Shown here piece by piece: positions 6,128 to 51,500 of a stretch of DNA of 64,000 bases. Origin of the DNA: Magallana gigas (lineage: Eukaryota); NCBI RefSeq assembly GCF_963853765.1, contig NC_088860.1, positions 5,704,001-5,768,000 of the forward strand, read 5' to 3'. Made by a program: the position numbers and the translations under genes. How positions within the stretch are numbered: the first letter of the stretch is position 1; the number at the start of each line of letters is the position of its first letter. The notes under the pieces were generated by a model. The model saw only the letters and a program-made list of their open reading frames with translations, had not been told where the DNA came from and did no database searches.

Positions 6128-6762
6128 TTATTGTGTTCCGATGGGACCACTTCGACCTTCGCACTTTCGCCTTTAGGGCGAAAATGCGAGAGCGCAAAGT
6201 TGCGAAGGCGAAGGAGCGAAAGTGCAAAGATGCGACCGGCGAAGCGCGAAGATGCGATGGCGAAAGTGCGAAGGCAAAGGAGCATACCCCCCTTCCCCCG
6301 GAAAAATTCATTATTAATATAATTTCATACAGTAAATGGGGAGAGGGGGTCCGGATCCCACTCCCCCATGGAAAATTTAATTTTATATAATAAAATTTCC
6401 AAAGTAAGCCTCGGAACCCCCTTCCCCCTTTCCAGTTTGTCTTCTGCCTCAGATGTCATTATATACAGCTAAAATTGTATTTAAACGATTATAAGCTTTA
6501 CAATTAAAAAAAGGCGAAGGCGAAAGCGCGAAGATGCAAAGGCGAGAGTGCGAATTTGCGAAGGCGAAGGAGCGATAGTTGTATTGCTTCTTCGCCTTCG
6601 CAACATTGCACTTCGCATCTTCGCGCTTCACCGTTGCATCATCCCACTTTCGCTTCTTCACCGTCGCACCTTTGCACTTTCGCCTTCGCAACTTCGCACT
6701 TTTGCATCTTCGCCCTATAGGCGAAAGTGCGATGGTCGAAGTGGCCCCTCGGAACACCATAA
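6128..6762. mobile_element. MITE with long TIRs built of TTCGC/GCGAA motifs
   Basis: TTATTGTGTTCCGATGGGACCACTTCGACC... mirrored by ...GGTCGAAGTGGCCCCTCGGAACACCATAA; explains the K/R/A-rich spurious ORFs. Confidence 0.8.
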
Positions 6763-8145: not shown

Positions 8146-8326
8146 TGTTTGGAAGATGCACGATTCCTAAAAGATTCCACGGTGAATGGTTCAATCAGAG
8201 GTACGTTCCTGGGATGACCTTTCTAGTGACCGCAGACAAATAGGACATCAATGAAGACGGCAGCGAAGTAAATTGTGAAGATATATCCTCTCAAGGAAAC
8301 AGTGCTACCATGCTAATGGTCAAAAG
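8146..8326 (+). pseudogene. Copy A exon 2 with in-frame TAG (VFGRCTIPKRFHGEWF...ADK*DINEDGSEVNCEDI...TMLMVK)
   Basis: TACAG| and |GTGAG boundaries; homologous to 38095-38299; TAG at 8241-8243 aligns with TGG (W) in B. Confidence 0.88.
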
Positions 8327-11325: not shown

Positions 11326-11773
11326 TTTCTCGCATTATTTTGCATTAAAACGATGCCCGACAACTTTCTGTTATGATGTTCAAACGTTTACCTTTGGTTT
11401 CTTCCTCTGCGTGCTACAAATAGTGCCAGGCAAGAAGAGAGCAAGCGAGAATTTGTTCAATGAAAATATGTAAAATCTAGTCAATTAAGCTAAAGAACGA
11501 CTAAGCGATTAGCTTATTCCATCGTTTATGATTTTCTTACGGAGAGACGAAGTCTACATTTTACGGCGGCGTAGTAATATACAGTGTAAGACAAAGTCTC
11601 ACACTGATGTCTTACACCGTACAAACCGATCTCACACCGGTGATAATGAAAGAAAAAAACATTCACTCTGGGCATCACATTTTCTCACCGTTGACAGTTT
11701 AAATTAATATTTTTTGAATGGCTGAAGTATCATAGTGACGTAATGATTCCTAGAAGTCTTTTCCTTTTTGCAG

Positions 11774-11872
11774 GGAATTGTTATAGTTCGTTACAAGAAA
11801 GTATGGACTCGCCGATTGATTTTTGCTCATCCATGAACCCTAACTACTATACACACTCCTACACTATGTTCA
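11774..11872 (+). pseudogene. Copy A exon 4 (GNCYSSLQESMDSPIDFCSSMNPNYYTHSYTMF)
   Basis: TTTTGCAG| and |GTAAGT; phase 1-1; SMNP and TMF shared with 38965-39075. Confidence 0.8.
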
Positions 11873-12345
11873 GTAAGTAAGATGCATAGCATGGCCTTTC
11901 ATGCATATGATGATAACGTTCTCTATCTGTTGACAATGAAGAATTTTGACTTTACGTGGTTTAAAAATTGATCAGTTATTTAACTCAATTATTGCTGCGA
12001 GAAGATATCATTTTTGCTTTTTAACGAAAATTCAATTGCTTTGTTGCATTAAGTCTCTTTGTACTCCATTCAGTGTGCAAATAATGATTGTTTGAGATTC
12101 ATACCTGGATCCTTATAAATAATAAATGTAAAATTTCAGAATAGAACTGTATCAGATAAAGATATAAATTAACGTATTACAGCACTGTAGTAACCTGTCT
12201 GCGAAACCATTAACAATTTGGAGAAGAGTTCAATTACATAACTTCTTTGTGTAATATAACCATGAATTAAGTCTATGATAATAGTTACCATTGGCAAATC
12301 TATATTAACGCGAGTAGCTTGTAAATTGAGTAATCTTTACTGTAG

Positions 12346-12555
12346 GACAATCCTTAATTACTGTCAACTGTGCAACAACATTTGAGGGGGCGTATCAGTT
12401 TTCCTATGAGGAGGACTCTGGTTCTGGAGGTATTTGTAATCCTCCGGACAGCCAAATCAAAGCCTGCCAAGACCCCGGATCTAGGTATATCGACAACGAG
12501 GTGTTTTACATGACGTATCGGAAGTGCCTTGATGTACCCATGTCTCGGAATGCAA
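12346..12555 (+). pseudogene. Copy A exon 5 (RQSLITVNCATTFEGAYQFSYEEDSGSGGICNPPDSQIKACQDPGSRY...)
   Basis: 210 nt like B exon 5; about 73% aa identity by hand alignment (51 of 70). Confidence 0.9.
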
Positions 12556-12717
12556 GTCAGTAGTTCAATATACATGTCACCACTGCAAAATAATGTGGCT
12601 TTTCATTGTGGGAACAAAATGTTATATAGGTAGTGAGGTAAACCTCATTGTTGTTTGGTTTGCAAATACGACGACTTCAAGTCTCTTTGTTAACTACACA
12701 GTTCAATAATTTTTTAC

Positions 12718-15700
12718 TTAACTACTAATTGTTTCCCACTAAATACTAACTGTTTCCCACTAACTACTAACTGTTTCCCACTATCTACTTAGTATTTCCC
12801 ACTAACTTCTAACTGTTTCCCACTAACTTCTAATTGTTTCCCACCAACTACTAACTGTTTCCCACTATCTACTAACTGTTTACCACTAACTACTAACTGT
12901 TTCCCACTAACTACTATTGTTTCCCATTAACTTCTAATTGTTTCCCACTAACTTCTAACTATTTTCCACTAACTGCTAACTGTTTCCCACTAACTACTGT
13001 TTCCCACTAACTACTAACCGTTTCAAACTAACAAGTAACTGTTTCCCCACTGACGACTAACTGTTTCCTACTAACTACTAACTGTTTTTCATTAACTTTT
13101 AATTGTTTCTCACTAACTACTTACTGTTTCCCACTAACTACTCACTGTTTTCCACTTACTACTAATTGTTTCCCACTAACGACTAACTGATTCCCAACTA
13201 CTTATTGTTTCCCACTAACAACTTACTGATTCCCATTAACTACTGACTGTTTCCCACTAACTACTAACTGTTTCCAACTTACAATAATTTGTTTCCTACT
13301 ACTAATTGTTTCCCACTACTAATAAATTCCCACTAACAACTAACTGTTTCCCACTAACAAGTCATTGTTTCCCTTTAACTACTAATTGTTTACCACTACT
13401 AATTAATTTCTACTAACAACTTACTGATTACCATTAACTACTGACTGTTTCCCACTAACTTCTAACTGTTTCCAACTTACAATAATTTGTTTCCTACTAC
13501 TAATTGTTTCCCACTACTAATTAATTCCTACTAACAACTAACTGTTTCCCACTAACTTCTAATTGTTTTCCACAAACTACTTACTGTTTCCCACTAACTA
13601 CTTACTATTTCTAACTAACTACTAATTGTTTTCCACAAACTACTAACTGTTTCCCACTAGCTACGAACTGTTTCCCACAAACTACTAACTGTTTCCCACT
13701 ATCTACTAACTATTTCCCACTAACTTCTATCTGTTTCCCACTAACTTCTAATTGTTTCCCACCAACTACTAACTGTTTACCACTACCTACTAACTGTTTC
13801 CCACTAACTACTATTGTTTCCCATTAACTTCTAATTGTTTCCCACTAACTTCTAACTATTTTCCACTAACTGCTTACCGTTTCCCACTAACTACTGTTTC
13901 ACACTAACTACTAACCGTTTCCAACTAACAAGTAACTGTTTCCCCACTAACGACTAACTGTTTCCTACTAACTACTAACTGTTTTTCATTAACTTTTAAT
14001 TGTTTCTCACTAACTACTTACTGTTTCCCACTAACTATTCACTGTTTTCCACTAACTACTAATTGTTTCCCACTAACGACTAACTGATTCCGAACTACTT
14101 ATTGTTTCCCACTAACGACTTACTGATTCCCATTAACTACTGACTGTTTCCCACTAACTACTAACTGTTTCCAACTTACAATAATTTGTTTCCTACTACT
14201 AATTGTTTCCCACTACTAATAAATTCCCACTAACAACTAACTGTTTCCCACTAACAACTCATTGTTTCCCAATGCTAATTAATTCACACTAACAACTGTT
14301 TCCCACTAACAACTCACTGTTTCCCTTTAAATACTAATTGTTTACCACTACCAATTAATTCCTACTAACAACTAACTGTTTCCCACTAACTACTCACTGT
14401 TTCCCACTAACTTCTTATTGTTTTCCACAAACTACTTACTGTTTCCCACTAACTACTAACTATTTCCAACTAACTACTATTTGTTTTCCACAAACTACTA
14501 ACTGTTTCCCACTAGCTACGAACTGTTTCCCACAAACTACTAACTGTTTCCCACTATCTACTAACTATTTCCCACTAACTTCTAACTGTTTCCCACTAAC
14601 TTCTAATTGTTTCCCACCAACTACTAACTGTTTACCACTACCTACTAACTGTTTCCCACTAACTACTATTGTTTCCCATTAACTTCTAATTGTTTCCCAC
14701 TAACTTCTAACTATTTTCCACTAACTGCTTACTGTTTCCCACTAACTACTGTTTCCCACTAACTACTAACCGTTTCCAACTAACAAGTAACTGTTTCCCC
14801 ACTAACGACTAACTGTTTCCTACTAACTACTAACTGTTTTTCATTAACTTTTGATTGTTTCTCACTAACTACTTACTGTTTCCCACTAACTACTCACTGT
14901 TTTCCACAAACTACTAATTGTTTCCTACTAACGACTAACTGATTCCCAACTACTTATTGTTTCCCACTAACGACTTACTGATTCCCATTAACTACTGACT
15001 GTTTCCTACTAACTACTAACTGTTTCCAACTTACAATAATTTGTTTCCTACTACTAATTGTTTCCCACTACTTATAAATTCCCACTAACAACTAACTGTT
15101 TCCCACTAACAACTCATTGTTTCCCAATGCTAATTAATTCACACTAACAATTGTTTCCTACTAACAACTCACTGTTTCCCTTTAACTACTAATTGTTTAA
15201 AACTACCAATTAATTCCTACTAACAACTAACTGTTTCCCACTAACTACTCACTGTTTCCCACTAACTTCTAATTGTTTTCCACAAACTACTAACTGTTTC
15301 CCACTAACTACTAATTGTTTTCCACAAACTACTAACTGTTTCCCACTAGCTACGAACTGTTTCCCACAAACTACTAACTGTTTCCCACTAGCTACGAACT
15401 GTTTCCCACAAACTACTTACTGTTTCCCACTATCTACTAACTATTTCCCACTAACTTCTAACTGTTTCCCACTAACTTCTAATTGTTTCCCACCAACTAC
15501 TAACTGTTTACCACTACCTACTAACTGTTTCCCACTAACTACTATTGTTTCCCATTAACTTCTAATTGTTTCCCACTAACTTCTAACTATTTTCCACTAA
15601 CTGCTTACTGTTTCCCACTAACTACTGTTTCCCACTAACTACTAACCGTTTCCAACTAACAAGTAACTGTTTCCCCACTAACGACTAACTGTTTCCTACT

Positions 15701-16435
15701 AACTACTAACTGTTTTTCATTAACTTTTGATTGTTTCTCACTAACTACTTACTGTTTCCCACTAACTACTCATTGTTTTCCACAAACTACTAATTGTTTC
15801 CCACTAACGACTAACTGATTCCCAACTACTTATTGTTTCCCACTAACGACTTACTGATTCCCATTAACTACTGACTGTTTCCTACTAACTACTAACTGTT
15901 TCCAACTTACAATAATTTGTTTCCTACTACTAATTGTTTCCCACTACTTATAAATTCCCACTAACAACTAACTGTTTCCCACTAACAACTCATTGTTTCC
16001 CACTGCTAATTAATTCACACTAACAATTGTTTCCTACTAACAACTCACTGTTTCCCTTTAACTACTAATTGTTTAAAACTACCAATTAATTCCTACTAAC
16101 AACTAACTGTTTCCCACTAACTACTCACTGTTTCCCACTAACTTCTAATTGTTTTCCACAAACTACTAACTGTTTCCCACTAACTACTAATTGTTTTCCA
16201 CAAACTACTAACTGTTTCCCACTAGCTACGAACTGTTTCCCACAAACTACTAATTGTTTCCCACTAACTACTAATTGTTCCCATCTAACGACTTACTGTT
16301 TCCAACTAACTATTAATTGTTTCCCACTAACTACTAACTGTTTCCTACTAACTACTTATTGTTTCCCACTACCTACTTACTGTTTCCCACTAACTTTTAA
16401 CTGTTTACTACTAACTATTAATTGTTTCCCACTAG
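12718..16435 (+). repeat. 21-bp minisatellite (CACTAACTACTAACTGTTTCC)n, about 175-180 units, with higher-order repeat of about 855 bp
   Basis: Direct reading; marker AACAAGTAAC recurs at 13030, 13927, 14782, 15658. Confidence 0.97.
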
Positions 16436-16554
16436 GTAAACGGTACCGTTGTATGGGATCATGGTCGGAAATTAAACCAGATGGTTTAAATTATACTTAT
16501 GCTGCAATAGCTGAAATTGTAGCAGAAAATGCCGAAGAGAAATTCAAGTGCTTG
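16436..16554 (+). pseudogene. Copy A exon 6 (KRYRCMGSWSEIKPDGLNYTYAAIAEIVAENAEEKFKCL)
   Basis: Acceptor CCCACTAG is the last minisatellite unit; donor GTAATG; homologous to 39958-40073. Confidence 0.88.
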
Positions 16555-16881
16555 GTAATGTGTGTGTGTGTGTTTGTGGGAGTGCGTGCTGGTGAGAGGG
16601 ATTGCAGAAAGTTATCATCTTATTGCTCTTTATCATATTATTATTTTCAATTATTTTGGTTGAATGGAATCAAGGTGTCCTGCATCATTCACCTATATAC
16701 CTACACTACATTCCAATAAAGCAAAAAATAAACACTTTCAAATTAATTCTTGCAAATTGTATTCTTTTGCCCGTTTCAGTAATGAAGAATTTCATTCCTT
16801 TGTATTTGAATAACAGTAGCCAATATAATATATTGAAAGAAAAATTCTTTTATAAATCAAATCAGTTTGTTTACATTTTAG

Positions 16882-16999
16882 ATGACCTTGACAAAGGATA
16901 AAGAGAACATTGAGACCAGATGGGTCATGTCTTCCCGTGCTGAATGCAAGACTCTCATCTCCATCTACACAGGACCAGTCAAACTAGTTCTCACAAAAA
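16882..16999 (+). pseudogene. Copy A exon 7 (MTLTKDKENIETRWVMSSRAECKTLISIYTGPVKLVLTK)
   Basis: TTTTAG| and |GTGAGT; homologous to 40239-40359. Confidence 0.88.
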
Positions 17000-17539
17000 G
17001 TGAGTAATTTTTTTAAGAAACAGCTCACGATGCAGAGAATGAGATGATTGCTTAAGCAGGTTATCATGTTTTTAAATAACGTGACAATATGCATACACAC
17101 TTTCAAAATAGGGTTGAATGCTACACCAACAATTTTTTGCTGGATTGTTATTGTTATTGGTGATTGATGTATGTAAAAAAAATCTTTTATTTTGAAGAGA
17201 AAATTGAAAAAAAAAGTTTTGTTGGCTATAAAACATTAAAAATTAAAATTTTCTGTCAGTAAGTATATTGTTTCAAAAAGGTCATGTGTTTTCTACCAGG
17301 GAATTAATTTTTAGAAATATTCATATATATAAAAAAGAACTATTCAAATCCTGGCACGAATTGAAACAAAAACTCAATGTATTTCATTATATAGAATACG
17401 AATACCTCATCGTTAAAAAACATTCTTTAAATTGATTAAACTTTAAAATCAAAAAGATATCTCATTGACAGTTACAGGGATTTTATTAATTTTTATTTTT
17501 TTCTATACAATAATTTATTTTTTTTTAAATTGTTTATAG

Positions 17540-22080: not shown

Positions 22081-25000
22081 ATGAACAAGTTGCTGTCCTT
22101 TAAAAAAGGACTACAATACGTGGACCATTTGCATGTGTTTCCAACGAAAACGTGAATTTTGTCAGATTCCATCGACTCTAGCTGTCTGCTTTTAACCACT
22201 AAATTTGTACGTTGTATTACGTATACATGTACATGTATATATAGCCCTGACTTTTTATCTCAGAATTTAAAGGATTCATACATCTAGAATAATTATGATA
22301 TATCTATGAATGATGCTTGCATGTTTAGTATCAGACATTCGGTGAATTCTACTATTTGCGCACATATTACGATTCACACTACTTTGTTAACTATGCAGTG
22401 ACAGCTTTGTGTAAATTAAACATTTCATATTTTGATGCATTTTTCTTCAGATTTAAACTTTTATATAGTGACATAATGATTCAATCATACTTAAATGCTT
22501 AAAAAAATTAATCGGGAAGTTCTCTTGCCTCGCCTACTATAAAAGAAAAGTTTATTTACATGTGTATTCGGAAAACAACAAAACATTGCAAATTATGCTA
22601 TTTGATGTATGTTGTAGTTTAGGCATAACATTAACTTATTTCATAATACTGAAAGTTCATATCACATGCCAATCATTTCTTTAAAATGAATACTTTGTTT
22701 CTGTACTGTTTACCGACAACTTTACAATTACAGCGCCTTTGAACTTATGTGTGAATATGGCACGGAATCCCGATCCCGATTCAGATAAACGTGTGCTAGC
22801 CTAGTTCCCTGAGCTACCCATTACGTACAGGAACCAGGTTAGCTCATGCGCAGGCTGAATTTTCCCCACAGCATCCGGTTTAACCTCGCTTATATATTTT
22901 CATCAGGGTCCACGCAAAAACGTCAGTCAGCGTCCGACCCAGTGGAAGGTTGTATTTGCTGACAAGGTCGTTATATCGAGCATACTGTAGAGCTTACGAA
23001 AAGATGACTTCAGACGAGACTCTTGGTAGACCTGATTATCAACTTGTTTGATTTATATAAAATCGGATAGATGATTAATTTTTAAATCAATACTTAGTCA
23101 GCAAAGACTAGATTTTAGTTTAAAAACCTCTTAAGTTAGCATTGTTAAACTAAGTCTATATTTATCTTCACATCATTTGAAGAAGTACCACGTGCATGTA
23201 TTATGTTTTAGACGAAGTCCGAGACCAATTTGATGTTTCTAAAAAAATTTGAACCCATGAAACGAAACTGATTTCAACATATTGAGAATACTTCTTGAAA
23301 TATGAGCAACTCAGAACGTTTACAGTTGTAATTTGTGCTTGTGGGTGGCTGTGTGCTCCTTATCTATATTAATTACAATTCTACAAAACGTATGTATTCT
23401 CATTCTCATATTTTACTCTTAGTATCTTTATAAAACCATATGAAAGCTACATGTTATTTTGAATGTTTATGAACTCGCATTTAAATACAATCCATTTTAA
23501 TTTGTTAAGATATTACTTAAAAATAAATCTTGAACGTAGAGTTTGTATCAACTTTAGATCTATTGACAAGCGTTTGTCAAGGTTCTCAAAGATTCTGAAA
23601 TTTCACATCCATCAATCTTATTAATTCAAGGATCATCAAATCAATATTTCCCTGTATACAGTATGACATACTATTTATTTTCTTGAATGAGGAGGTCATA
23701 TAAAAGGATGTAACATTTGGTCTTTTTTATTACGACGCAGTTTCAATTGCTCTGGTGATGGATTAAAATTCAAGGTTCCAACATTGGTATTCTAGTGTGT
23801 CCTTGGGTAATAGGATGACTTTTAGATTTCAAAGAAATGTTTAGAAATAACTTTGTTGAATTTGGTGAAAATTGGGCAATTCATTATAAATGCGAATTAT
23901 CTATTTGCAGATATTTTGCCTTTCTAGTTTTCCTTAGAAAATTGGATAATGTTTAGATTTCTTTGTTAAATTTGGAAAAAATGAGGCCAATTTTTTGTAA
24001 ATGCGACTTTTTGTGCAGATTTTTAGCTTTTCTAGTGCATCCTTAGATAATTTGATGATTTTTAGATTTCGGAGAAATGTTTAGAAATAATTTAGTTGAA
24101 TTTGCGTAAAATGAGGCTATTTATTGTAAATGCGACTTATTCTTGCGTACACTATTTATGAAAGGTTTTTAGAAGTAATGTAACAAATGCTAGATAATCA
24201 TCGACATAAAGCAAAAAATACGCTAAGTTTATGCTGTTTAATAATGACAAAAATAACAAATTATATAGAATGTGTAGTCGCAAAGGGTGGTCGCCACATA
24301 CCAAAACCAAAAGTAGTCGAGCACAATTGGCCGTGATGCTCTTGCACACTTTGTTATACTTTTTAATGAATAAAACATAAACTAATATTTTAAGATTCGT
24401 TAAAAAGATCTGCTTGGAATGGTGCTCTTTTACACTTTTTTGTATTTAATAAAATAAATAAACTAAAGGCTTATTCCTTGATCACATGATACAGTGATCT
24501 GTGCAAATCTTGTACTCTGTGGTGAGGAACACCCCTACACAAGTCATGGAATCATTAACCCGTTTAACAATGTAAATTTAGGTTTAAAATCTTGGAACAG
24601 TTATAGCAGTTGAATTATTGAATAAAATTGATCGAATTTTCAACTTGGAATTTTACAAATTAGGATTGTGCAAATTTTGATATATCGCAGCCCTCGAAGA
24701 CCACGGTCATTATAAATTGTGACATTACTTCAATCAATCCTTGTGTTTAAAATTATATAATTTTTCTCTGCCAGAGATTAAATCACACCTTCCTTGGCTC
24801 CCGAGCGTAAACAGCGAACATGATTTAGTTTATGAAACACAATACCGTAACTAGAATTTAAAGAGCATAATTTTGACAATAACTCAACTAAGAAGTGAAG
24901 AGAGGCACAGAAAAACATTTTATTTTCAACCAAATAAACGCGCCAAAATGTCCGTGAACATAACATTGCAATAGATATAGGTATAAGTATATATATATAT

Positions 25001-32300: not shown

Positions 32301-33997
32301 GTAAGTTTTATTTGAAGAACATGTATTAAATTCATTGTTTAAATATCAAAGTAGTATATGCTGTAATTTTCACGTCGGAAATTTTTACCGGGAACTTGAA
32401 TTTACGACTTTTAAAAATGACTAAAAAGATGATTGTTTATAAACTTCTGTTTGTCATATATTTGTTGGTAACGCAATTCATTGGGGTGTATTAAAGCGAA
32501 ATAATATATTATCACGGTAGAAAACAGTTTGCTATACATTTTTCACTAGATAAATCGTTCTTATAAAACTCAATGATTCATCTTAATCTTATTCATCACT
32601 AAGAATTTAGTACCATGCGAAATTGACACAATAATTTGCTGCTAAATAAAAATCTATTAAAAGTAGCTCACTTTGCTTCATTTACGTTCGGCGTGTATAT
32701 GTTGTCTGAATATGTCGACATAAAACGTATTTCATTCACTTGCTTCGAAAGTGTCTCATTGCAAAGATGCGACCGGCGAAGCGCGAGGATGCGATGGCGA
32801 AAGTGCGAAGGCAAAGGAGCTTAGCTCCCCCCCCCTCGGAAAAATTCATTATTAATATAATTTTATACAGTAAATGGCGAGGGGGGGGGGGTCCGGATCC
32901 CACTCCTCCCTGGAAAATTTAATTTTATATAATAAAATTTCCAAAGTAAGCCTCGGAACCCCCCCCCCCTTCCAGTTTGTCTTCTGCCTCAGATGTCATT
33001 ATATACAGCTAAAATTGTATTTAAACGATTATAAGCTTTACAATTATAAAAAGGCGAAGGCGAAAGCGCGAAGATGCGAAGGCGAGAGTGCGAATTTGCG
33101 AAGGCGAAGGAGCGATAGTTGTATTGCTTCTTTGCCTTCGCAACATTGCACTTTCGCATCTTTGCGCTTCGCCGTTGCATCATCCCACTTTCGCTTCACC
33201 GTGGTACCTTCGCACTTTCGCCTTCGCAACTATAGGCGAAAATGCGAAGGTCGAAGTGGCCCCATCAGAACACCATAAATAGGAGATGATTATATGAAGA
33301 AGAGGAGAAATGATTCAGCTCAAGTTATGTTTTCGTTGCTAAAATTGATACTTGACAGACGCGTCAAAAAGCCAATGTGACCTTGACAACATCTTCGCTA
33401 GCCAAGGTTTTCTAATCCGCACCGCTTCTCAAAAGTAAGATGCCTTGACAAATGCAAACTAAAACAATAATATTAACGATGAGCATAAATTGTAATAAGC
33501 AATGAATTGTCTTTGCCAGTTTGACAGTTGTTTTAATGGATGGTCATGTATTTCCTATAAAATGAATATCTAACCTTTTGACAATGGTTAGGTTTTGAAT
33601 AATGATGACGATTAAATTATTCTGGATGAATTTAGTTTAAACGTTTTCCCAGAAAACAGATGGGCAATAAGATAAAATTGTAATTGCCGGAAAACATCGT
33701 ACGGTACAACATATTGAAGGTTATTTACTGATGAAGCTCATCAAATCGTTGTCAATGATTAGGATACTTAATTGTGCGATACAAACTATATTTCTGACCT
33801 TAAAACCGATATCAAGTATTTGGCAATCCTTATACATGTAACTCTTTATTTAGAACGCGTGGTTTGTAACAACGCACTTTGGGAAAAAAATTGAAGTTCG
33901 TTAAATTTGGGACCAAGTCAACGCACTTTGAATTTTTGAAGTATGGTTGATGTACACTCTTAACGCACTTTGAAAAAACTTTGTAAAGTGCGTTGAC

Positions 33998-45500: not shown

Positions 45501-48500
45501 AGGAGTGAGAATCCACTGCTGACTGGTCACACCCGCCGTGTGCTCTTTGTCGTAATCGGGGAAAAAACGAAAAGTCCGCAGGCAATTAGGTTATTAATTA
45601 TGGTCTAATAAATATTATGAAAAACGTCAGTCAGCGTCCGACCCAGTGGAAGATTGTATTTGCTGACAAGGTCGTTGTATCCACCATAGAACTTACGAAA
45701 AGATTACTTCAGACGAGACTCTTGATAGACCTGTTTTATCAACTTGTTTGATTTATATAAGATCGGATAGATTATTAATTTTTAAATCAATACTTAGTCA
45801 GCATAGACTAGGTTTTAGTTTAAAAACCTCTTAAGTTAGCATTGTTCAACTAAGTCTATATTTATCTTCACATCAATTGAAGAAGTACCACATACATGTA
45901 CATGTTTTAGACGACGTCCGAGACCAATCTTATGTTTCTAATAAAATTTGAACCCATGAAACGAAACTGATTTCAACATATTGAGAATACTTCTTTAAAT
46001 AGGAGCAACTCAAAACGTTTACAGTTGTAATTTGTGCTTGTGTGTGGTTGTATGCTCCTTACCTATATTAATTACAATTCTACAAAACGTATGTATTCTC
46101 AGTATCGTATTTTACTCGTAGTATCTTTAAAAACCATATGAAAGTTACATGCTATTTTGAATGTTTATGAACTCGCATTTAAATACAATCCATTTTAATT
46201 TGTTAAGATATTACTTAAAAATAAATCTTGAAAGTAGAGTTTGTATCAACTTTAGATCCATTGACAAGCGTTTGTCAAGGTTCTCAAAGATTCTGAAATT
46301 TCACATGCACCAATCTTATTACTTCAAGGATCAATAAATCAATTGGGTTCATTTTTGTTAAATATGTATGGTTTACTATTACTGATCTTCGTGCATATGC
46401 ATAAATATGTGTTGTTTATTTGTACTCATATATTTAAATTGATCTTTAATCGCTCTTATTCATAAGAGCTAGTTTTGTTTCATCATATTTAAGATGTATG
46501 TATGTTAGGGGATTTTTTTGATGTTCAAGTTGTCGACTTGCGATAAAAAAAAGCATTGTTTTAGCACTTAACAACAGTGTGCATTATTAACAAATTTAAC
46601 TGGCTTGTCATACTTATTATATAAACAATTGCATACCCTCAATAACTCAGAGAAGATAGGGAAAAAAATAGTAGGACTAAAATGTACTTGTTAAAACCAC
46701 AAAGACCCTAAATATCTTATTCGGAAGGATATAGCGGATTTTTTAAAATTCCTTTTCGATTAATCTTTTAGAAACCTTTCATTCATAAATCTTCAAAAAG
46801 GGGTAGGGTTCTTAGATTATTGCTTTTATATCTATATTTTAATCAAGAAACTGTATACAGGGGTATTTTTGTCCTGTGTAATCTTCGCCCTTCTACACTT
46901 GCAAAGAGTTTCTCCCCATCGAGAATTCGCCCAGTCACAGTTATGTTTCAAATTAGACATTGAGATTCTTAAAATTCTTATATTCGCCTGTTGACAACGA
47001 AGGTGAAATGGTTGAAAATTAAACGAGGGCGAATAATAGATCCCTAATATCCCTAATATTTCCCTGTATACAGTATGATATACTATTTATTTGCTTGAAT
47101 GAGGAGGTCATATTAGAGGATGTAACATTTGGCCTTTTTTTTTTATTACGACGTAGTTTTAATTGCTCTGGTGACGGATCAAAATTCAAGGTTCCAACAT
47201 TGCTATTCTAGTGTGTCCTTGGGTAATAGGATGACTTAGATTTCGAAGAAATGTTTAGAAATAACTTTGTTAAATTTGGTGAAAATGGGGCAATTCATTA
47301 TAAATGCGAATTATTTTTGTGCAAATATTTTGCCTTTCTAGTTGTCCTTCGAAAATTGGATGATGTTTAGATTTCGAAGAAATGTTCAGAAGTAACTGTG
47401 TTAAATTTGGAGAAAATGAGGCCAATTTTTGTAAATGCGACCTTTGTGCAGATTGTTAGCTTGTCTAGCGCATCCTTAGATAATTGGATGATTTTTAGAT
47501 TTCGGAGAAATGTTTAGAAATAACTTTGTTGAATTTGCGAAAAATGAGGCAATTTATTGTAAATGCGACTTATTTTTGAGTACACTATTCATGAAAGGTT
47601 TTCAGAAGTAATGTTACAAATGCTAGATAATCATCGACATAAGCAGAAAATATGCTTAGTTATTGCAGTATTCTAATGACAAAAATAACAAATTATATTG
47701 AATGTGGACAAAGGGTGGTCGCCACACACCAAGATCAAAAGTAGTCGAGCGCAATTGGCCGTGATGCTCTTGCACACTTTGTTATACTTTTAAATGAATA
47801 AAATAAACTTATATTTTAAGATACTTTAAAACGATCTGCTTGGATTAATGCTCTTTTAGACCTTTTAATATTAAAAAAATAAATAAGCTAAAGGCTTATT
47901 CTTTGATCACATGATAGAGTGATCTGTACAAATCTTGTACTCTGTGGTGAGGAACACCTCTGCACAAGTCATTAATCATTAACCCGTTTAACAATGTAAA
48001 TTTAGGTTTAAAGTCTTGAACAGTTATAGCAGTTGAATTATTGAATAAAATTGATCGAATTTTACAAATTGGGATTGTGCAAATTTTGATACATCGGAGC
48101 CCTAGAGAAATACGGTCAATATAAATTGTGACATTACTTCAATCAACCCTTGTGTTTCAAATTATATAATTTGTCTCTGCCAGAGATTTGATCACAGCTT
48201 CCATGGCTCCCGAGCGTAAACAGCGAACATAATTTAGTTTATGAAACACAATACTGACACTAGAATTTATAGAGCATAATTTTGACAATAGCTCAACTAA
48301 GAAGTGAGAAGAGGTACAGAATCATTTTATTTTCAACCAAATTAACGCTCCAAAATTCAGATGTGTCCTTGAACATAACATTGCAATAGATATAGGTATA
48401 AATATATATATAACGTTAATTTCATTTTTTTTATTAAGCTGGATTGTCATTTACCATGTCGCCATCTTGTGATCTGTAGGGGATCACTACCGGATTAGTA

Positions 48501-51500
48501 AACAAACTCATCTATTTCGTAAGGAACTGTTTTCAGTTACTTCCAACTTCATAAATGGTCAAGATACCAGAAAAGAATTTCGTGACATTTATTAAATTCA
48601 AGTAGATGAAAATTTTTAAGGAAAGTACCCATTTTGCCATCTCTATGCTCTTTCTGTAGTTCATGCGCTAGTTGGACATCGTCAAGTTTCAAGTTAGGCT
48701 TTATTTCCGAAACACAAATTGATGTTTAAAAATGTCCTCTATATCAACAGTTTCAACGAAAATACTGTTTTTATTGTGCATCAGTTTTTGGTAAACAGTA
48801 AATAGGATTATTGCTAAATGTTAATATTCTAATTACTGACCTCACTGTAAGCATTTTCCAAGAATGTTAACACTGACGGACGACAAGTGAAAATCATTGC
48901 ACCATTATATTGTTATACACTCACAAAAAATATTGAAGAAGTAATTATTGAATTTCATTAAACGAAAGCTAGCAAAAGATATATGAACATTTAGGCGCAG
49001 CAACAAATGTATTGATGAATGTAAAAAAGGAATGCTATTTTATTTAATTTCATTTTTGTTCTTGTTAAAGCTGTCGTTTCATGTAAGCGATACTACAGTA
49101 TACTAGTATTGCATCCGTTGTTTTATCATTTATCATTGTATTTCAATATGTTGTTTACTGCATTTACCACTACCGTCAAAGCCCATGTAGACACCAATGA
49201 AAGCATTTAGCCTATCATTCATGGGATAACAAAATTTTGATAATTCATATACTTCTGCCCCTTTTATAAAATTTCCATTGCGGCTAAGCATAGTTAGTTA
49301 CATGTACACATATCTTGGGAGAGCGGTGTCCTAGAATGACAAATTAATTCCACTGCACACCTTCAAACACGTGGCCTACCGCGTGATACTCTGCTTGGTG
49401 CTTTCGATGTGATATATGGTGCTCGAGGAGCACTACGAAATATTGCCGGATAACTGGAAAGCCTTGTCTCTAAACGGAAAAACAACATCTGTTACTCCTC
49501 AAGATTGGTCTCTAATGCGTCGTGCTCTGCTTAACGCATTCAAGGTTGATTAAGGTATTTGGGGATGCAACGCAAAACTACTAGTGAAAAGGTTCACTTT
49601 TATCTCCTTACGTAACGTATAATTTGTTATCTTGTTAAAATTGTCAAAAGAATCACTACTAATCGATAGGAGTGAGCATCCACTGCTGACTTGTCACACC
49701 CGCCGTGTGCTCTTTGTCGTAATCGGGAAAAAAACGGAATAGTCCGTAGGCAATTAGGTTATTAATTATGGTCTAATAAATAGTATGAAAAACGTCAGTC
49801 AGCGTCCGACCCAGTGGAAGATTGTATTTACTGACAAGGTCGTTGTATCCACCATAGAACTTACGAAATGATGACTTCAGACGAGACTCTTGATAGACCT
49901 GTTTTATCAACTTGTTTGATTTATATAACATCGGATAGATTATTAATTTTTAAATCAATTCTTAGTCAGCATAGACTAGATTTTAGTTTAAAAACCTCTT
50001 AAGTTAGCATTTTTCAGCTAAGTCTATATTTATCTTCACATCATTTGAAGAAGTACCACGTACATGTACATGTTTTAAACGAAGTCCGAGACCAATTTAA
50101 TGTTTCTAATAAAATTTGAACCCATGAAACGAAACTGATTTCAACATATTGAGATATACTTCTTTAAATAGGAGCAACTCAAAACGTTTACAGTTGTAAT
50201 TTGTGCTTGTGTGTGGTTGTGTGCTCCTTACCTATATTAATTACAATTCTACAAAACGTATATATTCTCATTCTCATATTTTACTCTTCGTATCTTTATA
50301 AAACCATATGAAAGCTACATGTTATTTTGAATGTTAATGAACTCGCATTTAATACAATCCATTTTAATTTGTTAAGATATTACTTAAAAATAAATCTTGA
50401 ACGTAGAGTATGTATCAATTTTACATCTGTTGACAAGCGTTTGTCAAGGTTCTCAAAGATTCTGAAATTTCACATGTATTAATTAATTCAAGGATCAATA
50501 AATCAATTGCGTTCATATTTTTTGAAATATGTATTGGTTTACTATTAGTGCTCTTGGTGCATATGCATAATTATGTGTTGTTTATTTGTACTCATTTATT
50601 TGAATTGAACTTTAATCGCCTGATTTCGTGATAGCTAGTTTTGTTTCATCTTATTTAAGATGTATGTATGTCAGGGGATGCTTTATTTATTATTTTGAAG
50701 TTGTCGACTTGCAATAAAAAACATTGTTTTAGCAGTTTTACAACAGTGTGCATTATAAACAAATTTAAGTGGCTTGTCATACTTATTATATAAACAATTG
50801 CATACCCTCAATAACTCAAAGTAGATAGGAAAAAAATTAGTTGGACTAAAATGTACTTGTTATAATTAAAACCGCAAAGACCCTAAATATCTTATCCGGA
50901 GGGGTATAAGGGATTTTTTTAGATGCCTTTTCGATTAAACTTTTAAAAACCTTTTATTCATAAAACTTTCTTCGAAAAGGAAGCGGTGTTCTAATTAGAT
51001 TACTGCTTTTATATCTATATTTTAATCAAGATACTGTATACAGGGGTATTTTCGTCCCGTGTAATCTTCGCCTTCTACACTTGCAAAGAGTTTCGCCCCA
51101 TCGAGAATTCGCCCAGTCACAGTTATGTTTCAAGTTACTTAATATTAGACATTGAGATTCTTAAAATTCTTATATTCGCCTGTTGACAACGAAGGTGAAA
51201 TGGTTGAAAATTAAACGAGGGCGAATAATAGATCCCTAATATCCCTAATATTTCCCTGTATACATGTACAGTATGACATACTATTTATTTGCTTGAATGA
51301 GGTGGTCATATAAGAGGATGTAACATTTGGCTTTTTTTTTATTACGACGTAGTTTCAATTGCTCTGGTGATGGATCAAAATTCAAGGTTCCAACATTGCT
51401 ATTCTAGTGTGTCCTTGGGTAATAGGATGATTTTTAGATTTCGAAGAAATGTTCAGAAGTAACTGTGTTAAATTTGGAGAAAATGAGGCCAATTTTTGTA

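What the first reader, a model, noticed from the sequence alone, without database searches (positions are those of the whole stretch)
12718..16435. Array as a potential STAR-protein (SF1/Quaking/How) sponge RNA
Established: SF1/BBP binds UACUAAC, and Quaking-family proteins bind ACUAAY with a nearby UAAY half-site. Seen: every consensus unit has two ACUAAC cores 7 nt apart, so the intron RNA would carry hundreds of bipartite sites. Inference: if copy A (coding-dead) is still transcribed, its intron or stable lariat could act as a lncRNA that sequesters these proteins or nucleates nuclear foci, like a repeat-expansion RNA. This could give a pseudogene an RNA-level function.
Basis: inference. 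Interest (0 to 1): 0.7.

Follow-up and report, generated by a model that had tools for sequence, protein, structure and literature searches.

The report
Branch-site minisatellite in oyster pseudogene intron
A 3.7-kb tandem repeat that copies an intron's own branch-point signal about 180 times fills one intron of a transcribed but broken oyster gene; its RNA would be dense in binding motifs for the splicing proteins SF1 and Quaking, but nothing found here shows the repeat is kept for that purpose.

Summary
A 21-bp minisatellite of about 182 units lies at window 12719-16435 and occurs nowhere else in the 564-Mb genome. On the + strand it carries 154 ACTAAC, 53 TACTAAC and 158 bipartite Quaking-type sites, and none on the other strand. 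That is about 160 sites rather than "hundreds", and only 36 of 183 units keep both cores.

The array makes up 96% of intron 5 (12556-16435) of copy A of a duplicated DUF7044/DUF7042 gene and runs up to the acceptor AG. Each unit is a branch site plus a pyrimidine tract.

- Copy A has an in-frame TAG in exon 2.
- A public RNA-derived contig shows copy A transcribed, carrying that TAG, and spliced exactly 12555|16436.
- SF1-type and Quaking-type genes exist in the genome.
- The array RNA is predicted to be almost unstructured.

The sponge function is untested, and the evolutionary signs look neutral:
- Motif positions are no better conserved than spacer positions.
- The array grew recently in blocks of about 870 bp that are 97-99% identical.
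- The two paralogous introns lack it.
- Only one copy-A transcript turned up.

The best reading is a passenger minisatellite born from the intron's 3' end. The closest functional analogue is Gomafu/MIAT. The same stretch was also noted in this scan as an amplified 3' splice-site signal.

The parts
12719..16435 (+). 21-bp minisatellite of about 182 units, consensus CACTAACTACTAACTGTTTCC. Each unit holds two branch-site cores and a pyrimidine tract. The units are organised in about 4.3 higher-order blocks of 855-897 bp.
12556..16435 (+). Intron 5 of copy A, 3880 nt with GT...AG ends. The first 162 nt are unique sequence and the rest is the array.
   Evidence: The spliced contig L028 joins 12555 to 16436.
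12346..12555 (+). Exon 5 of copy A, with an open frame. It encodes the first part of a DUF7042 domain.
   Evidence: Pfam PF23069, E 2.9e-09..
16436..16554 (+). Exon 6 of copy A, which continues the DUF7042 domain.
16409..16415 (+). The last TACTAAC of the array. Its branch adenosine at 16414 lies 22 nt before the exon, making it the likely working branch site.
   Evidence: for position and distance. Its use as the branch point is inferred.
16214..16225 (+). The nearest of five internal TTTCCCACTAG sites whose sequence context is identical to the true acceptor. The AGs are at 13659, 14514, 15348, 15390 and 16224. This one lies 210 nt upstream of the true acceptor and in frame with it.
8241..8243 (+). 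In-frame TAG in exon 2 (8146-8326) of copy A, at a position where copy B has Trp.
   Evidence: Also present in transcript contig L028.
39645..39957 (+). The equivalent intron of copy B, about 313 nt, with no array.
   Evidence: The third paralog has the same intron type.

Best explanation
This is a single-locus intronic minisatellite in a Pacific-oyster-type genome.

Origin. A 21-nt piece of the 3' end of intron 5, holding the branch site and the pyrimidine tract just upstream of the acceptor, was duplicated in tandem by slippage. It was then enlarged by unequal crossing-over in blocks of about 41 units.

Host gene. The host is copy A of a tandemly duplicated secreted DUF7044/DUF7042 gene. It carries a nonsense codon in exon 2 but is still transcribed, and the intron is still removed at its authentic sites.

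The RNA. Each transcript briefly yields a 3.9-kb intron or lariat that is G-poor, almost unstructured, and holds about 160-180 optimal SF1/Quaking-type sites, each followed by a U2AF-type pyrimidine tract.

My reading. The motif density is a by-product of which 21 nt happened to be amplified. The array is a neutral or mildly harmful passenger, not a selected protein sponge.

What is shown and what is inferred. Shown: the anatomy, the uniqueness in the genome, the block structure, the stop codon, transcription and exact splicing. Inferred: the origin from the 3' splice region, neutrality, and protein binding.
For: - Uniqueness. All 92 matches to the 21-mer at up to 2 mismatches lie in this one array on the + strand. 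None lies elsewhere in 564 Mb, and the reversed control found none.
- Anatomy. The array ends in the acceptor AG, and the last TACTAAC places its branch A 22 nt before the exon, about one unit length.
- Possible origin. The 3' end of copy B's intron aligns weakly to the unit: score 19 against a shuffle mean of 12, with 6 of 500 shuffles reaching it.
- Recent growth. Higher-order blocks of 855-897 bp are 97-99% identical to their neighbours.
- No motif constraint. The twelve motif positions are 85% conserved, or 88% if C or T is accepted at position 14. The nine other positions are 88.7% conserved.
- Not shared. Copy B and the third paralog have introns of the short type with no array; copy B's is about 313 nt.
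- Broken gene. Exon 2 carries a TAG.
- Transcription. One spliced copy-A contig carries that TAG and the exact 12555|16436 junction.
- Low apparent expression. No other copy-A transcript was found.
- No known RNA family in 11500-17500.
Against: - The motif load is extreme. There are 48 ACUAA per kb, about three times the density quoted for MIAT (16 in about 1 kb, PMC11483029).
- The RNA is predicted to be open: MFE of -22 to -25 kcal/mol per 500 nt, against -100 +/- 15 for control windows.
- The array is transcribed in sense, and the binder genes exist. Binding of SF1/Quaking-type proteins is therefore likely whenever the intron RNA is present.
- Conservation across species, expression level and lariat stability could not be examined, so a function is not excluded.
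- The per-position conservation test is confounded, because units copied within blocks are not independent.
Confidence: 0.7

Rival explanations
1. The excised intron or its lariat from the dead copy A is a selected, Gomafu-like multivalent decoy. It sequesters SF1 and/or Quaking/How-type STAR proteins, perhaps with U2AF, or it nucleates nuclear foci and so tunes splicing in trans.
For: - 158 bipartite Quaking-type sites and 53 TACTAAC in 3.7 kb, confined to the sense strand.
- An unstructured RNA.
- Sense transcription with the stop codon present.
- SF1-HH and STAR_dimer genes in the genome.
- Published precedents: Gomafu UACUAAC repeats bind SF1 and slow splicing in vitro (PMC3116199); dual ACUAAC is a high-affinity site for dimeric QKI (PMC11483029); PNCTR sequesters PTBP1 (PMC6224606); lariats can act as decoys (PMC5147768, PMC3933050).
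Against: - The repeats are in an intron that is removed, and lariats are normally debranched and degraded quickly (PMC12238851).
- Motif positions are not preferentially conserved, and 42 of 183 units have lost every core.
- The array grew recently by block duplication.
- It is missing from both paralogs.
- Only one copy-A transcript contig was found.
- A transcript with an early stop codon is expected to be scarce, and intron output cannot exceed transcription of the gene.
Confidence: 0.07
2. The array acts in cis only. About 180 decoy branch sites and pyrimidine tracts, plus five decoy acceptors, slow or derail removal of intron 5. Possible routes are competition for SF1 and U2AF, Quaking-type repression at dual ACUAAC sites, or use of a cryptic acceptor. 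This would lower or alter the output of copy A, and may have contributed to its decay.
For: - Five internal TTTCCCACTAG sites are identical in context to the true acceptor. AG is otherwise depleted, with 12 seen against 58 expected.
- The decoy at 16224 lies 210 nt upstream and in an open frame.
- QKI represses splicing at tandem ACUAAC branch sites (PMC11483029).
- The one transcript contig has an irregular 3' part, with intron 6 retained as far as an AATAAA at about 16716.
Against: The only junction seen across the array uses the authentic sites exactly, as does the NCBI model XP_011414794.2. The gene is already null through the exon 2 stop, so any cis effect now has little consequence.
Confidence: 0.15
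3. The array works at the DNA level, for example as a cluster of Myb-type YAACKG sites acting as an intronic enhancer or silencer, or as a recombination hotspot.
For: TAACTG occurs 59 times in the array against 13 times in the other 60 kb of the window.
Against: A 6-mer inside an amplified unit is expected to be frequent by construction. There is no conservation, no paralog shares the array, and the host gene is dead.
Confidence: 0.04
4. The array, or its length, is an assembly artefact.
For: One public contig (L035) crosses the whole intron with only about 16 units.
Against: Six independent genomic contigs from other runs start inside the array and carry about 283 nt of it next to exon 6. L035 has the array abutting both flanks. 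The two halves of L035's array meet at a stretch longer than 31 nt that is shared between early and late units, so a short-read assembler collapse is the likelier cause. The array therefore exists; only its length per allele is uncertain.
Confidence: 0.03

Closest known systems
Gomafu/MIAT lncRNA, whose tandem UACUAAC repeats bind SF1 and also QKI
   Same: Clustered optimal branch-site motifs in a transcribed RNA that does not make protein. The motif grammar is the same: UACUAAC/ACUAA, as in PMC3116199 and PMC11483029. The proposed mode of action, competing with introns for branch-site binding proteins, is also the same.
   Different: Gomafu has 6-7 UACUAAC, or 16 ACUAA in about 1 kb, inside a mature, nuclear-retained exon, and the feature is conserved from chicken to human. 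Here there are 53 TACTAAC and 178 ACTAA in an intron that is spliced out. The array is a true 21-bp minisatellite, found in one paralog only, with no evidence of conservation, stability, binding or foci. There is no sequence homology between the two.
Dual ACUAAC branch sites of RAI14 intron 10, a target of QKI/SF1 competition
   Same: Two ACUAAC elements close together upstream of a 3' splice site, either of which can serve as the branch site. Together they form a bipartite high-affinity site for dimeric QKI (PMC11483029).
   Different: RAI14 has one pair, 9 nt apart, regulating a cassette exon. Here the pair is 7 nt apart and is repeated. Only 36 units keep both cores, and the host is a pseudogene.
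Repeat-rich architectural or sponge RNAs such as PNCTR (PTBP1), and the lariat decoys seen in dbr1 mutants
   Same: Multivalent arrays of RBP sites created by tandem repeats (PMC6224606). Intron lariats are able to sequester proteins (PMC5147768, PMC3933050).
   Different: Those cases have demonstrated accumulation and binding. Lariat decoys need impaired debranching. Nothing of the kind is shown here.
Ordinary intronic minisatellites (VNTRs)
   Same: Head-to-tail units of 21 bp. Units are 76% alike on average. There is a higher-order block structure, strand asymmetry and a single locus.
   Different: The unit is the intron's own branch site plus pyrimidine tract, and the array abuts the acceptor. 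It therefore multiplies a functional splicing signal. A full-text search found no described case of this.

Membership tests
Minisatellite / VNTR | Tandem head-to-tail units of about 10-100 bp forming an array of 0.5 kb or more | tested here: met
   Period 21, 182 copies, 3.7 kb.
Minisatellite / VNTR | Internal variant units and block duplications that indicate unequal exchange | tested here: met
   Blocks of 855-897 bp that are 97-99% identical.
Minisatellite / VNTR | Length polymorphism among individuals | tested here: inconclusive
   Contig L035 has about 16 units, but an assembler collapse at shared 31-mers is a plausible cause.
Dispersed satellite or transposon-borne repeat family | Copies at many loci in the genome | tested here: not met
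   All 92 hits to the 21-mer lie in this array. A DNA search found only one other locus, an unrelated array at 70% identity on C7.
Quaking response element | ACUAAY core followed by a UAAY half-site within 1-20 nt, on the transcribed strand | tested here: met
   158 matches on the sense strand. Sense transcription is shown. This is a sequence match only.
Quaking response element | Bound by a Quaking/How-type protein | not testable with these tools
   A STAR_dimer gene is present in the genome. There are no binding data.
Gomafu/MIAT-type SF1-binding lncRNA | UACUAAC cluster located in the mature, stable, nuclear-retained transcript | tested here: not met
   The cluster is an intron that is excised at 12555|16436. 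The stability of the excised intron is unknown.
Gomafu/MIAT-type SF1-binding lncRNA | Repeat feature conserved between species | not testable with these tools
   No other oyster genomes were within reach. The array is absent from both paralogs.
Gomafu/MIAT-type SF1-binding lncRNA | SF1 binding and an effect on splicing kinetics | not testable with these tools
   An SF1-HH gene is present. No assay was possible.
Transcribed pseudogene | A disabling lesion in a gene that otherwise resembles its parent, plus evidence of transcription | tested here: met
   TAG at 8241-8243, where copy B has Trp. The spliced contig L028 carries the TAG. Exons 3-6 are open.

The most novel reading that the evidence does not exclude
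A dead paralog has been kept as a carrier for an intron that evolved, by amplification of its own 3' splice-site signal, into a natural multivalent decoy for branch-site binding proteins (SF1 and Quaking/How, with U2AF on the adjacent pyrimidine tracts). This would be a Gomafu-like function arisen independently in a mollusc and delivered by an excised intron or lariat.
Probability: 0.06. Interest if true: 0.75.

Novelty: new member of a known kind. Interest (0 to 1): 0.3.

Why it matters
As it stands this is an ordinary class of sequence, an intronic minisatellite, with an unusual unit: the branch site and pyrimidine tract of its own intron.

It is a clean natural example of a splicing signal amplified about 180-fold that still allows exact splicing. 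That bears on how the spliceosome picks one branch site and one acceptor among many equivalent ones.

If the intron RNA proved stable and bound by SF1 or Quaking-type proteins, it would be an independent invertebrate counterpart of Gomafu/MIAT. It would also show how a pseudogene can gain an RNA-level role. No evidence for that step exists yet.

Tried and rejected
- Dispersed satellite or transposon origin: rejected. The 21-mer is confined to this locus.
- Coding repeat: rejected. One frame of the array reads as CFPLTTN heptads and is continuous with exon 6, but it is broken by stops along the array, and the transcript splices the array out.
- Known RNA family in or near the intron: none at E <= 0.1.
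- Proto-unit in the paralogs. Copy B and the third paralog at C8:5795361-5795564 have a different, short intron. Only a weak similarity of the 3' end of copy B's intron to the unit was seen.
- Transcripts retaining the array. A protein search with the array-plus-exon-6 frame returned only hits anchored on exon 6. Six of the contigs are plain genomic pieces.
- Orthologs in other oysters. A search with XP_011414794.2 gave only paralog-type fragments and one distant Patella protein, and that protein's own locus is not on record. Cross-species conservation could not be tested.
- Literature search for branch-point minisatellites: nothing relevant found.
- Earlier notes of similar arrays in this genome, searched by words: none.
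Exons were scanned one by one by reference, and the only spliced sequences used were proteins returned by the database (P0001, P0002).
- N stretches in the window were left alone.

Full report
**What is there**

The window is AT-rich eukaryotic DNA. It holds a tandem segmental duplication: copy A at about 1815-25517, copy B at about 28496-48930, and a further partial copy.

Tandem Repeats Finder reports one large array at 12719-16434, with period 21, 182 copies and 76% matches. Written in another phase, the consensus is CACTAACTACTAACTGTTTCC. It holds two ACTAAC cores whose starts are 7 nt apart, followed by a short pyrimidine tract.

The array is very strand-asymmetric. G makes up 5.5% of the + strand, and GC skew reaches -0.68.

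**Motif counts**

| Motif (+ strand) | In the array (3.7 kb) | Rest of the window (60 kb) |
|---|---|---|
| ACTAAC | 154 | 7 |
| TACTAAC | 53 | 1 |
| ACTAAY | 177 | 38 |
| ACTAAY-N1-20-TAAY (bipartite) | 158 | 9 |
| GTTAGT (complement) | 0 | 8 |

Shuffling the array gives about 2-3 such sites.

Of 183 aligned units, 36 keep both cores, 105 keep one and 42 keep none.

**Where it sits**

The flanking sequences are exons on the + strand.
- Exon 5 is 12346-12555, followed by GT.
- The last two bases of the array, 16434-16435, are the acceptor AG.
- Exon 6 is 16436-16554.
- Both exons are open and match Pfam DUF7042. Other exons match DUF7044, DUF7043 and DUF7045 weakly.

The array is thus 96% of a 3880-nt intron and would be transcribed as ACUAAC.

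The last TACTAAC puts its branch adenosine 22 nt before the exon, which is about one unit length. Each unit therefore looks like a copy of the stretch from branch site to acceptor.

AG is depleted inside the array: 12 occur against 58 expected. Five of the 12 are TTTCCCACTAG sites identical in context to the true acceptor.

**Uniqueness and history**

In the 564-Mb assembly, all 92 matches to the 21-mer at up to 2 mismatches lie in this array on the + strand. A DNA search found only one other locus, an unrelated array at 70% identity.

Exon 5 has just three copies in the genome: A, B and a third paralog about 52 kb from copy B. The equivalent introns of B and of the third paralog are short and have no array.

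The array itself is built of about 4.3 blocks of 855-897 bp, roughly 41 units each. Neighbouring blocks are 97-99% identical. That identity is as high as, or higher than, the 94-97% seen between this assembly and public contigs from other samples. Most of the array's length is therefore recent.

**Is copy A dead, and is it transcribed?**

Exon 2 of copy A (8146-8326) has an in-frame TAG at 8241-8243, where copy B has Trp. Exons 3-6 are intact.

A protein search with the frame running from the array into exon 6 returned two useful hits. One is XP_011414794.2, an uncharacterised Crassostrea gigas protein that is a partial model of copy A. The other is a 187-aa protein from a 978-nt contig of run SRR14803154.

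That contig, L028, aligns to the window as exon 1, exon 2 (100% identical, TAG included), then exons 3, 4, 5 and 6. Its exon 5-exon 6 junction is exactly 12555|16436.

So copy A is transcribed in sense, carries the stop codon, and has its array intron removed at the authentic sites.

The 3' part of the contig is irregular. Intron 6 is retained as far as an AATAAA near 16716, and the sequence after that resembles copy B more than copy A. I do not rely on that part.

A second search, with XP_011414794.2 as query, found no further copy-A transcripts.

**Independent support that the array exists**

Six genomic contigs from other runs begin inside the array and run into exon 6 and beyond.

One contig, L035, crosses the intron with only about 16 units. 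Early and late units share stretches longer than 31 nt, so an assembler collapse is the likelier cause, though a short allele cannot be excluded.

**Would the RNA bind STAR proteins?**

At the level of sequence, yes.
- UACUAAC is the optimal SF1 site. Gomafu, with 6-7 such repeats, pulls down SF1 and slows splicing in vitro (PMC3116199).
- SF1 and QKI compete for ACUAA branch sites. Two nearby ACUAAC elements form a high-affinity site for dimeric QKI. MIAT is quoted as having 16 ACUAA in about 1 kb (PMC11483029).
- This array has 178 ACUAA in 3.7 kb.
- Its predicted folding energy is -22 to -25 kcal/mol per 500 nt, against -100 +/- 15 for control windows, so the sites would be single-stranded.
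- The genome has an SF1-HH gene and a STAR_dimer gene.

**Is it kept for that purpose?**

I aligned all units to the consensus. The twelve motif positions are 85% conserved on average, or 88% if C or T is accepted at position 14. The nine other positions average 88.7%. The two invariant positions are the TT inside the pyrimidine tract.

So there is no sign that the ACTAAC cores are protected more than the spacer. This test is weakened because units copied within blocks are not independent.

Several other points lean towards a passenger repeat:
- The growth by blocks is recent.
- Both paralogs lack the array.
- Only a single transcript was found.
- The repeats sit in an intron. Lariats are normally debranched and degraded quickly (PMC12238851, abstract).

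Precedents for repeat-based sponges and lariat decoys exist (PMC6224606, PMC5147768, PMC3933050). The idea is therefore legitimate, but it is not supported here.

**Verdict**

The sponge function is untested and, on indirect evidence, unlikely (about 0.07).

The most likely account (0.7) is a locus-specific minisatellite born from the intron's own 3' splice region. It rides in a transcribed pseudogene, and its motif richness is a by-product. A purely cis effect on splicing of this intron is the main alternative (0.15).

**Limits**

I had no RNA-seq coverage, no other oyster genomes and no binding data. Exons were scanned one by one by reference, and the only spliced proteins used were those returned by the database.

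Noticed in passing
L011 173-2669 (G000:C7:41857077-41859573); probable exon from L011 2707: A second long minisatellite of about 2.5 kb, with a 20/40-nt period and units holding CCCTAAC and CCCTGAC. It ends about 40 nt before a pyrimidine tract, an AG and an open frame that looks like a last coding exon (RPFTTTCLDYVSNYLVDLQ...). Tandem amplification of branch-site-like sequence at intron 3' ends may recur in this genome.
   Followed up: partly
window 16090-16716, + strand: The frame of exon 6 stays open for 115 codons back into the array, reading as CFPLTTN-type heptads. The decoy acceptor at 16224 is 210 nt upstream and in frame, so using it would insert 70 residues without a stop.
   Followed up: partly
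window 16555-16724 and L028 716-884: The only copy-A transcript contig retains the start of intron 6 up to an AATAAA followed by an A-run near 16716. It then continues with sequence that matches copy B (97%) better than copy A (93%). This could be intronic polyadenylation, or a chimeric assembly of A and B transcripts.
   Followed up: no
In the third paralog, the intron after exon 5 carries an extra insertion containing a GGCGTC hexamer run.
   Followed up: partly
window 45501-53724: A further tandem duplication of about 4 kb downstream of copy B (45501-49668 against 49668-53724, 90-93% identical). It includes 127/128-bp repeats that are also present at 23851-24070.
   Followed up: no
window 6128-6760 and 33054-33280: GC-rich 22-30-bp repeats (GCGAAAG.. 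units) arranged as inverted arms, upstream of exon 2 in both copies.
   Followed up: no
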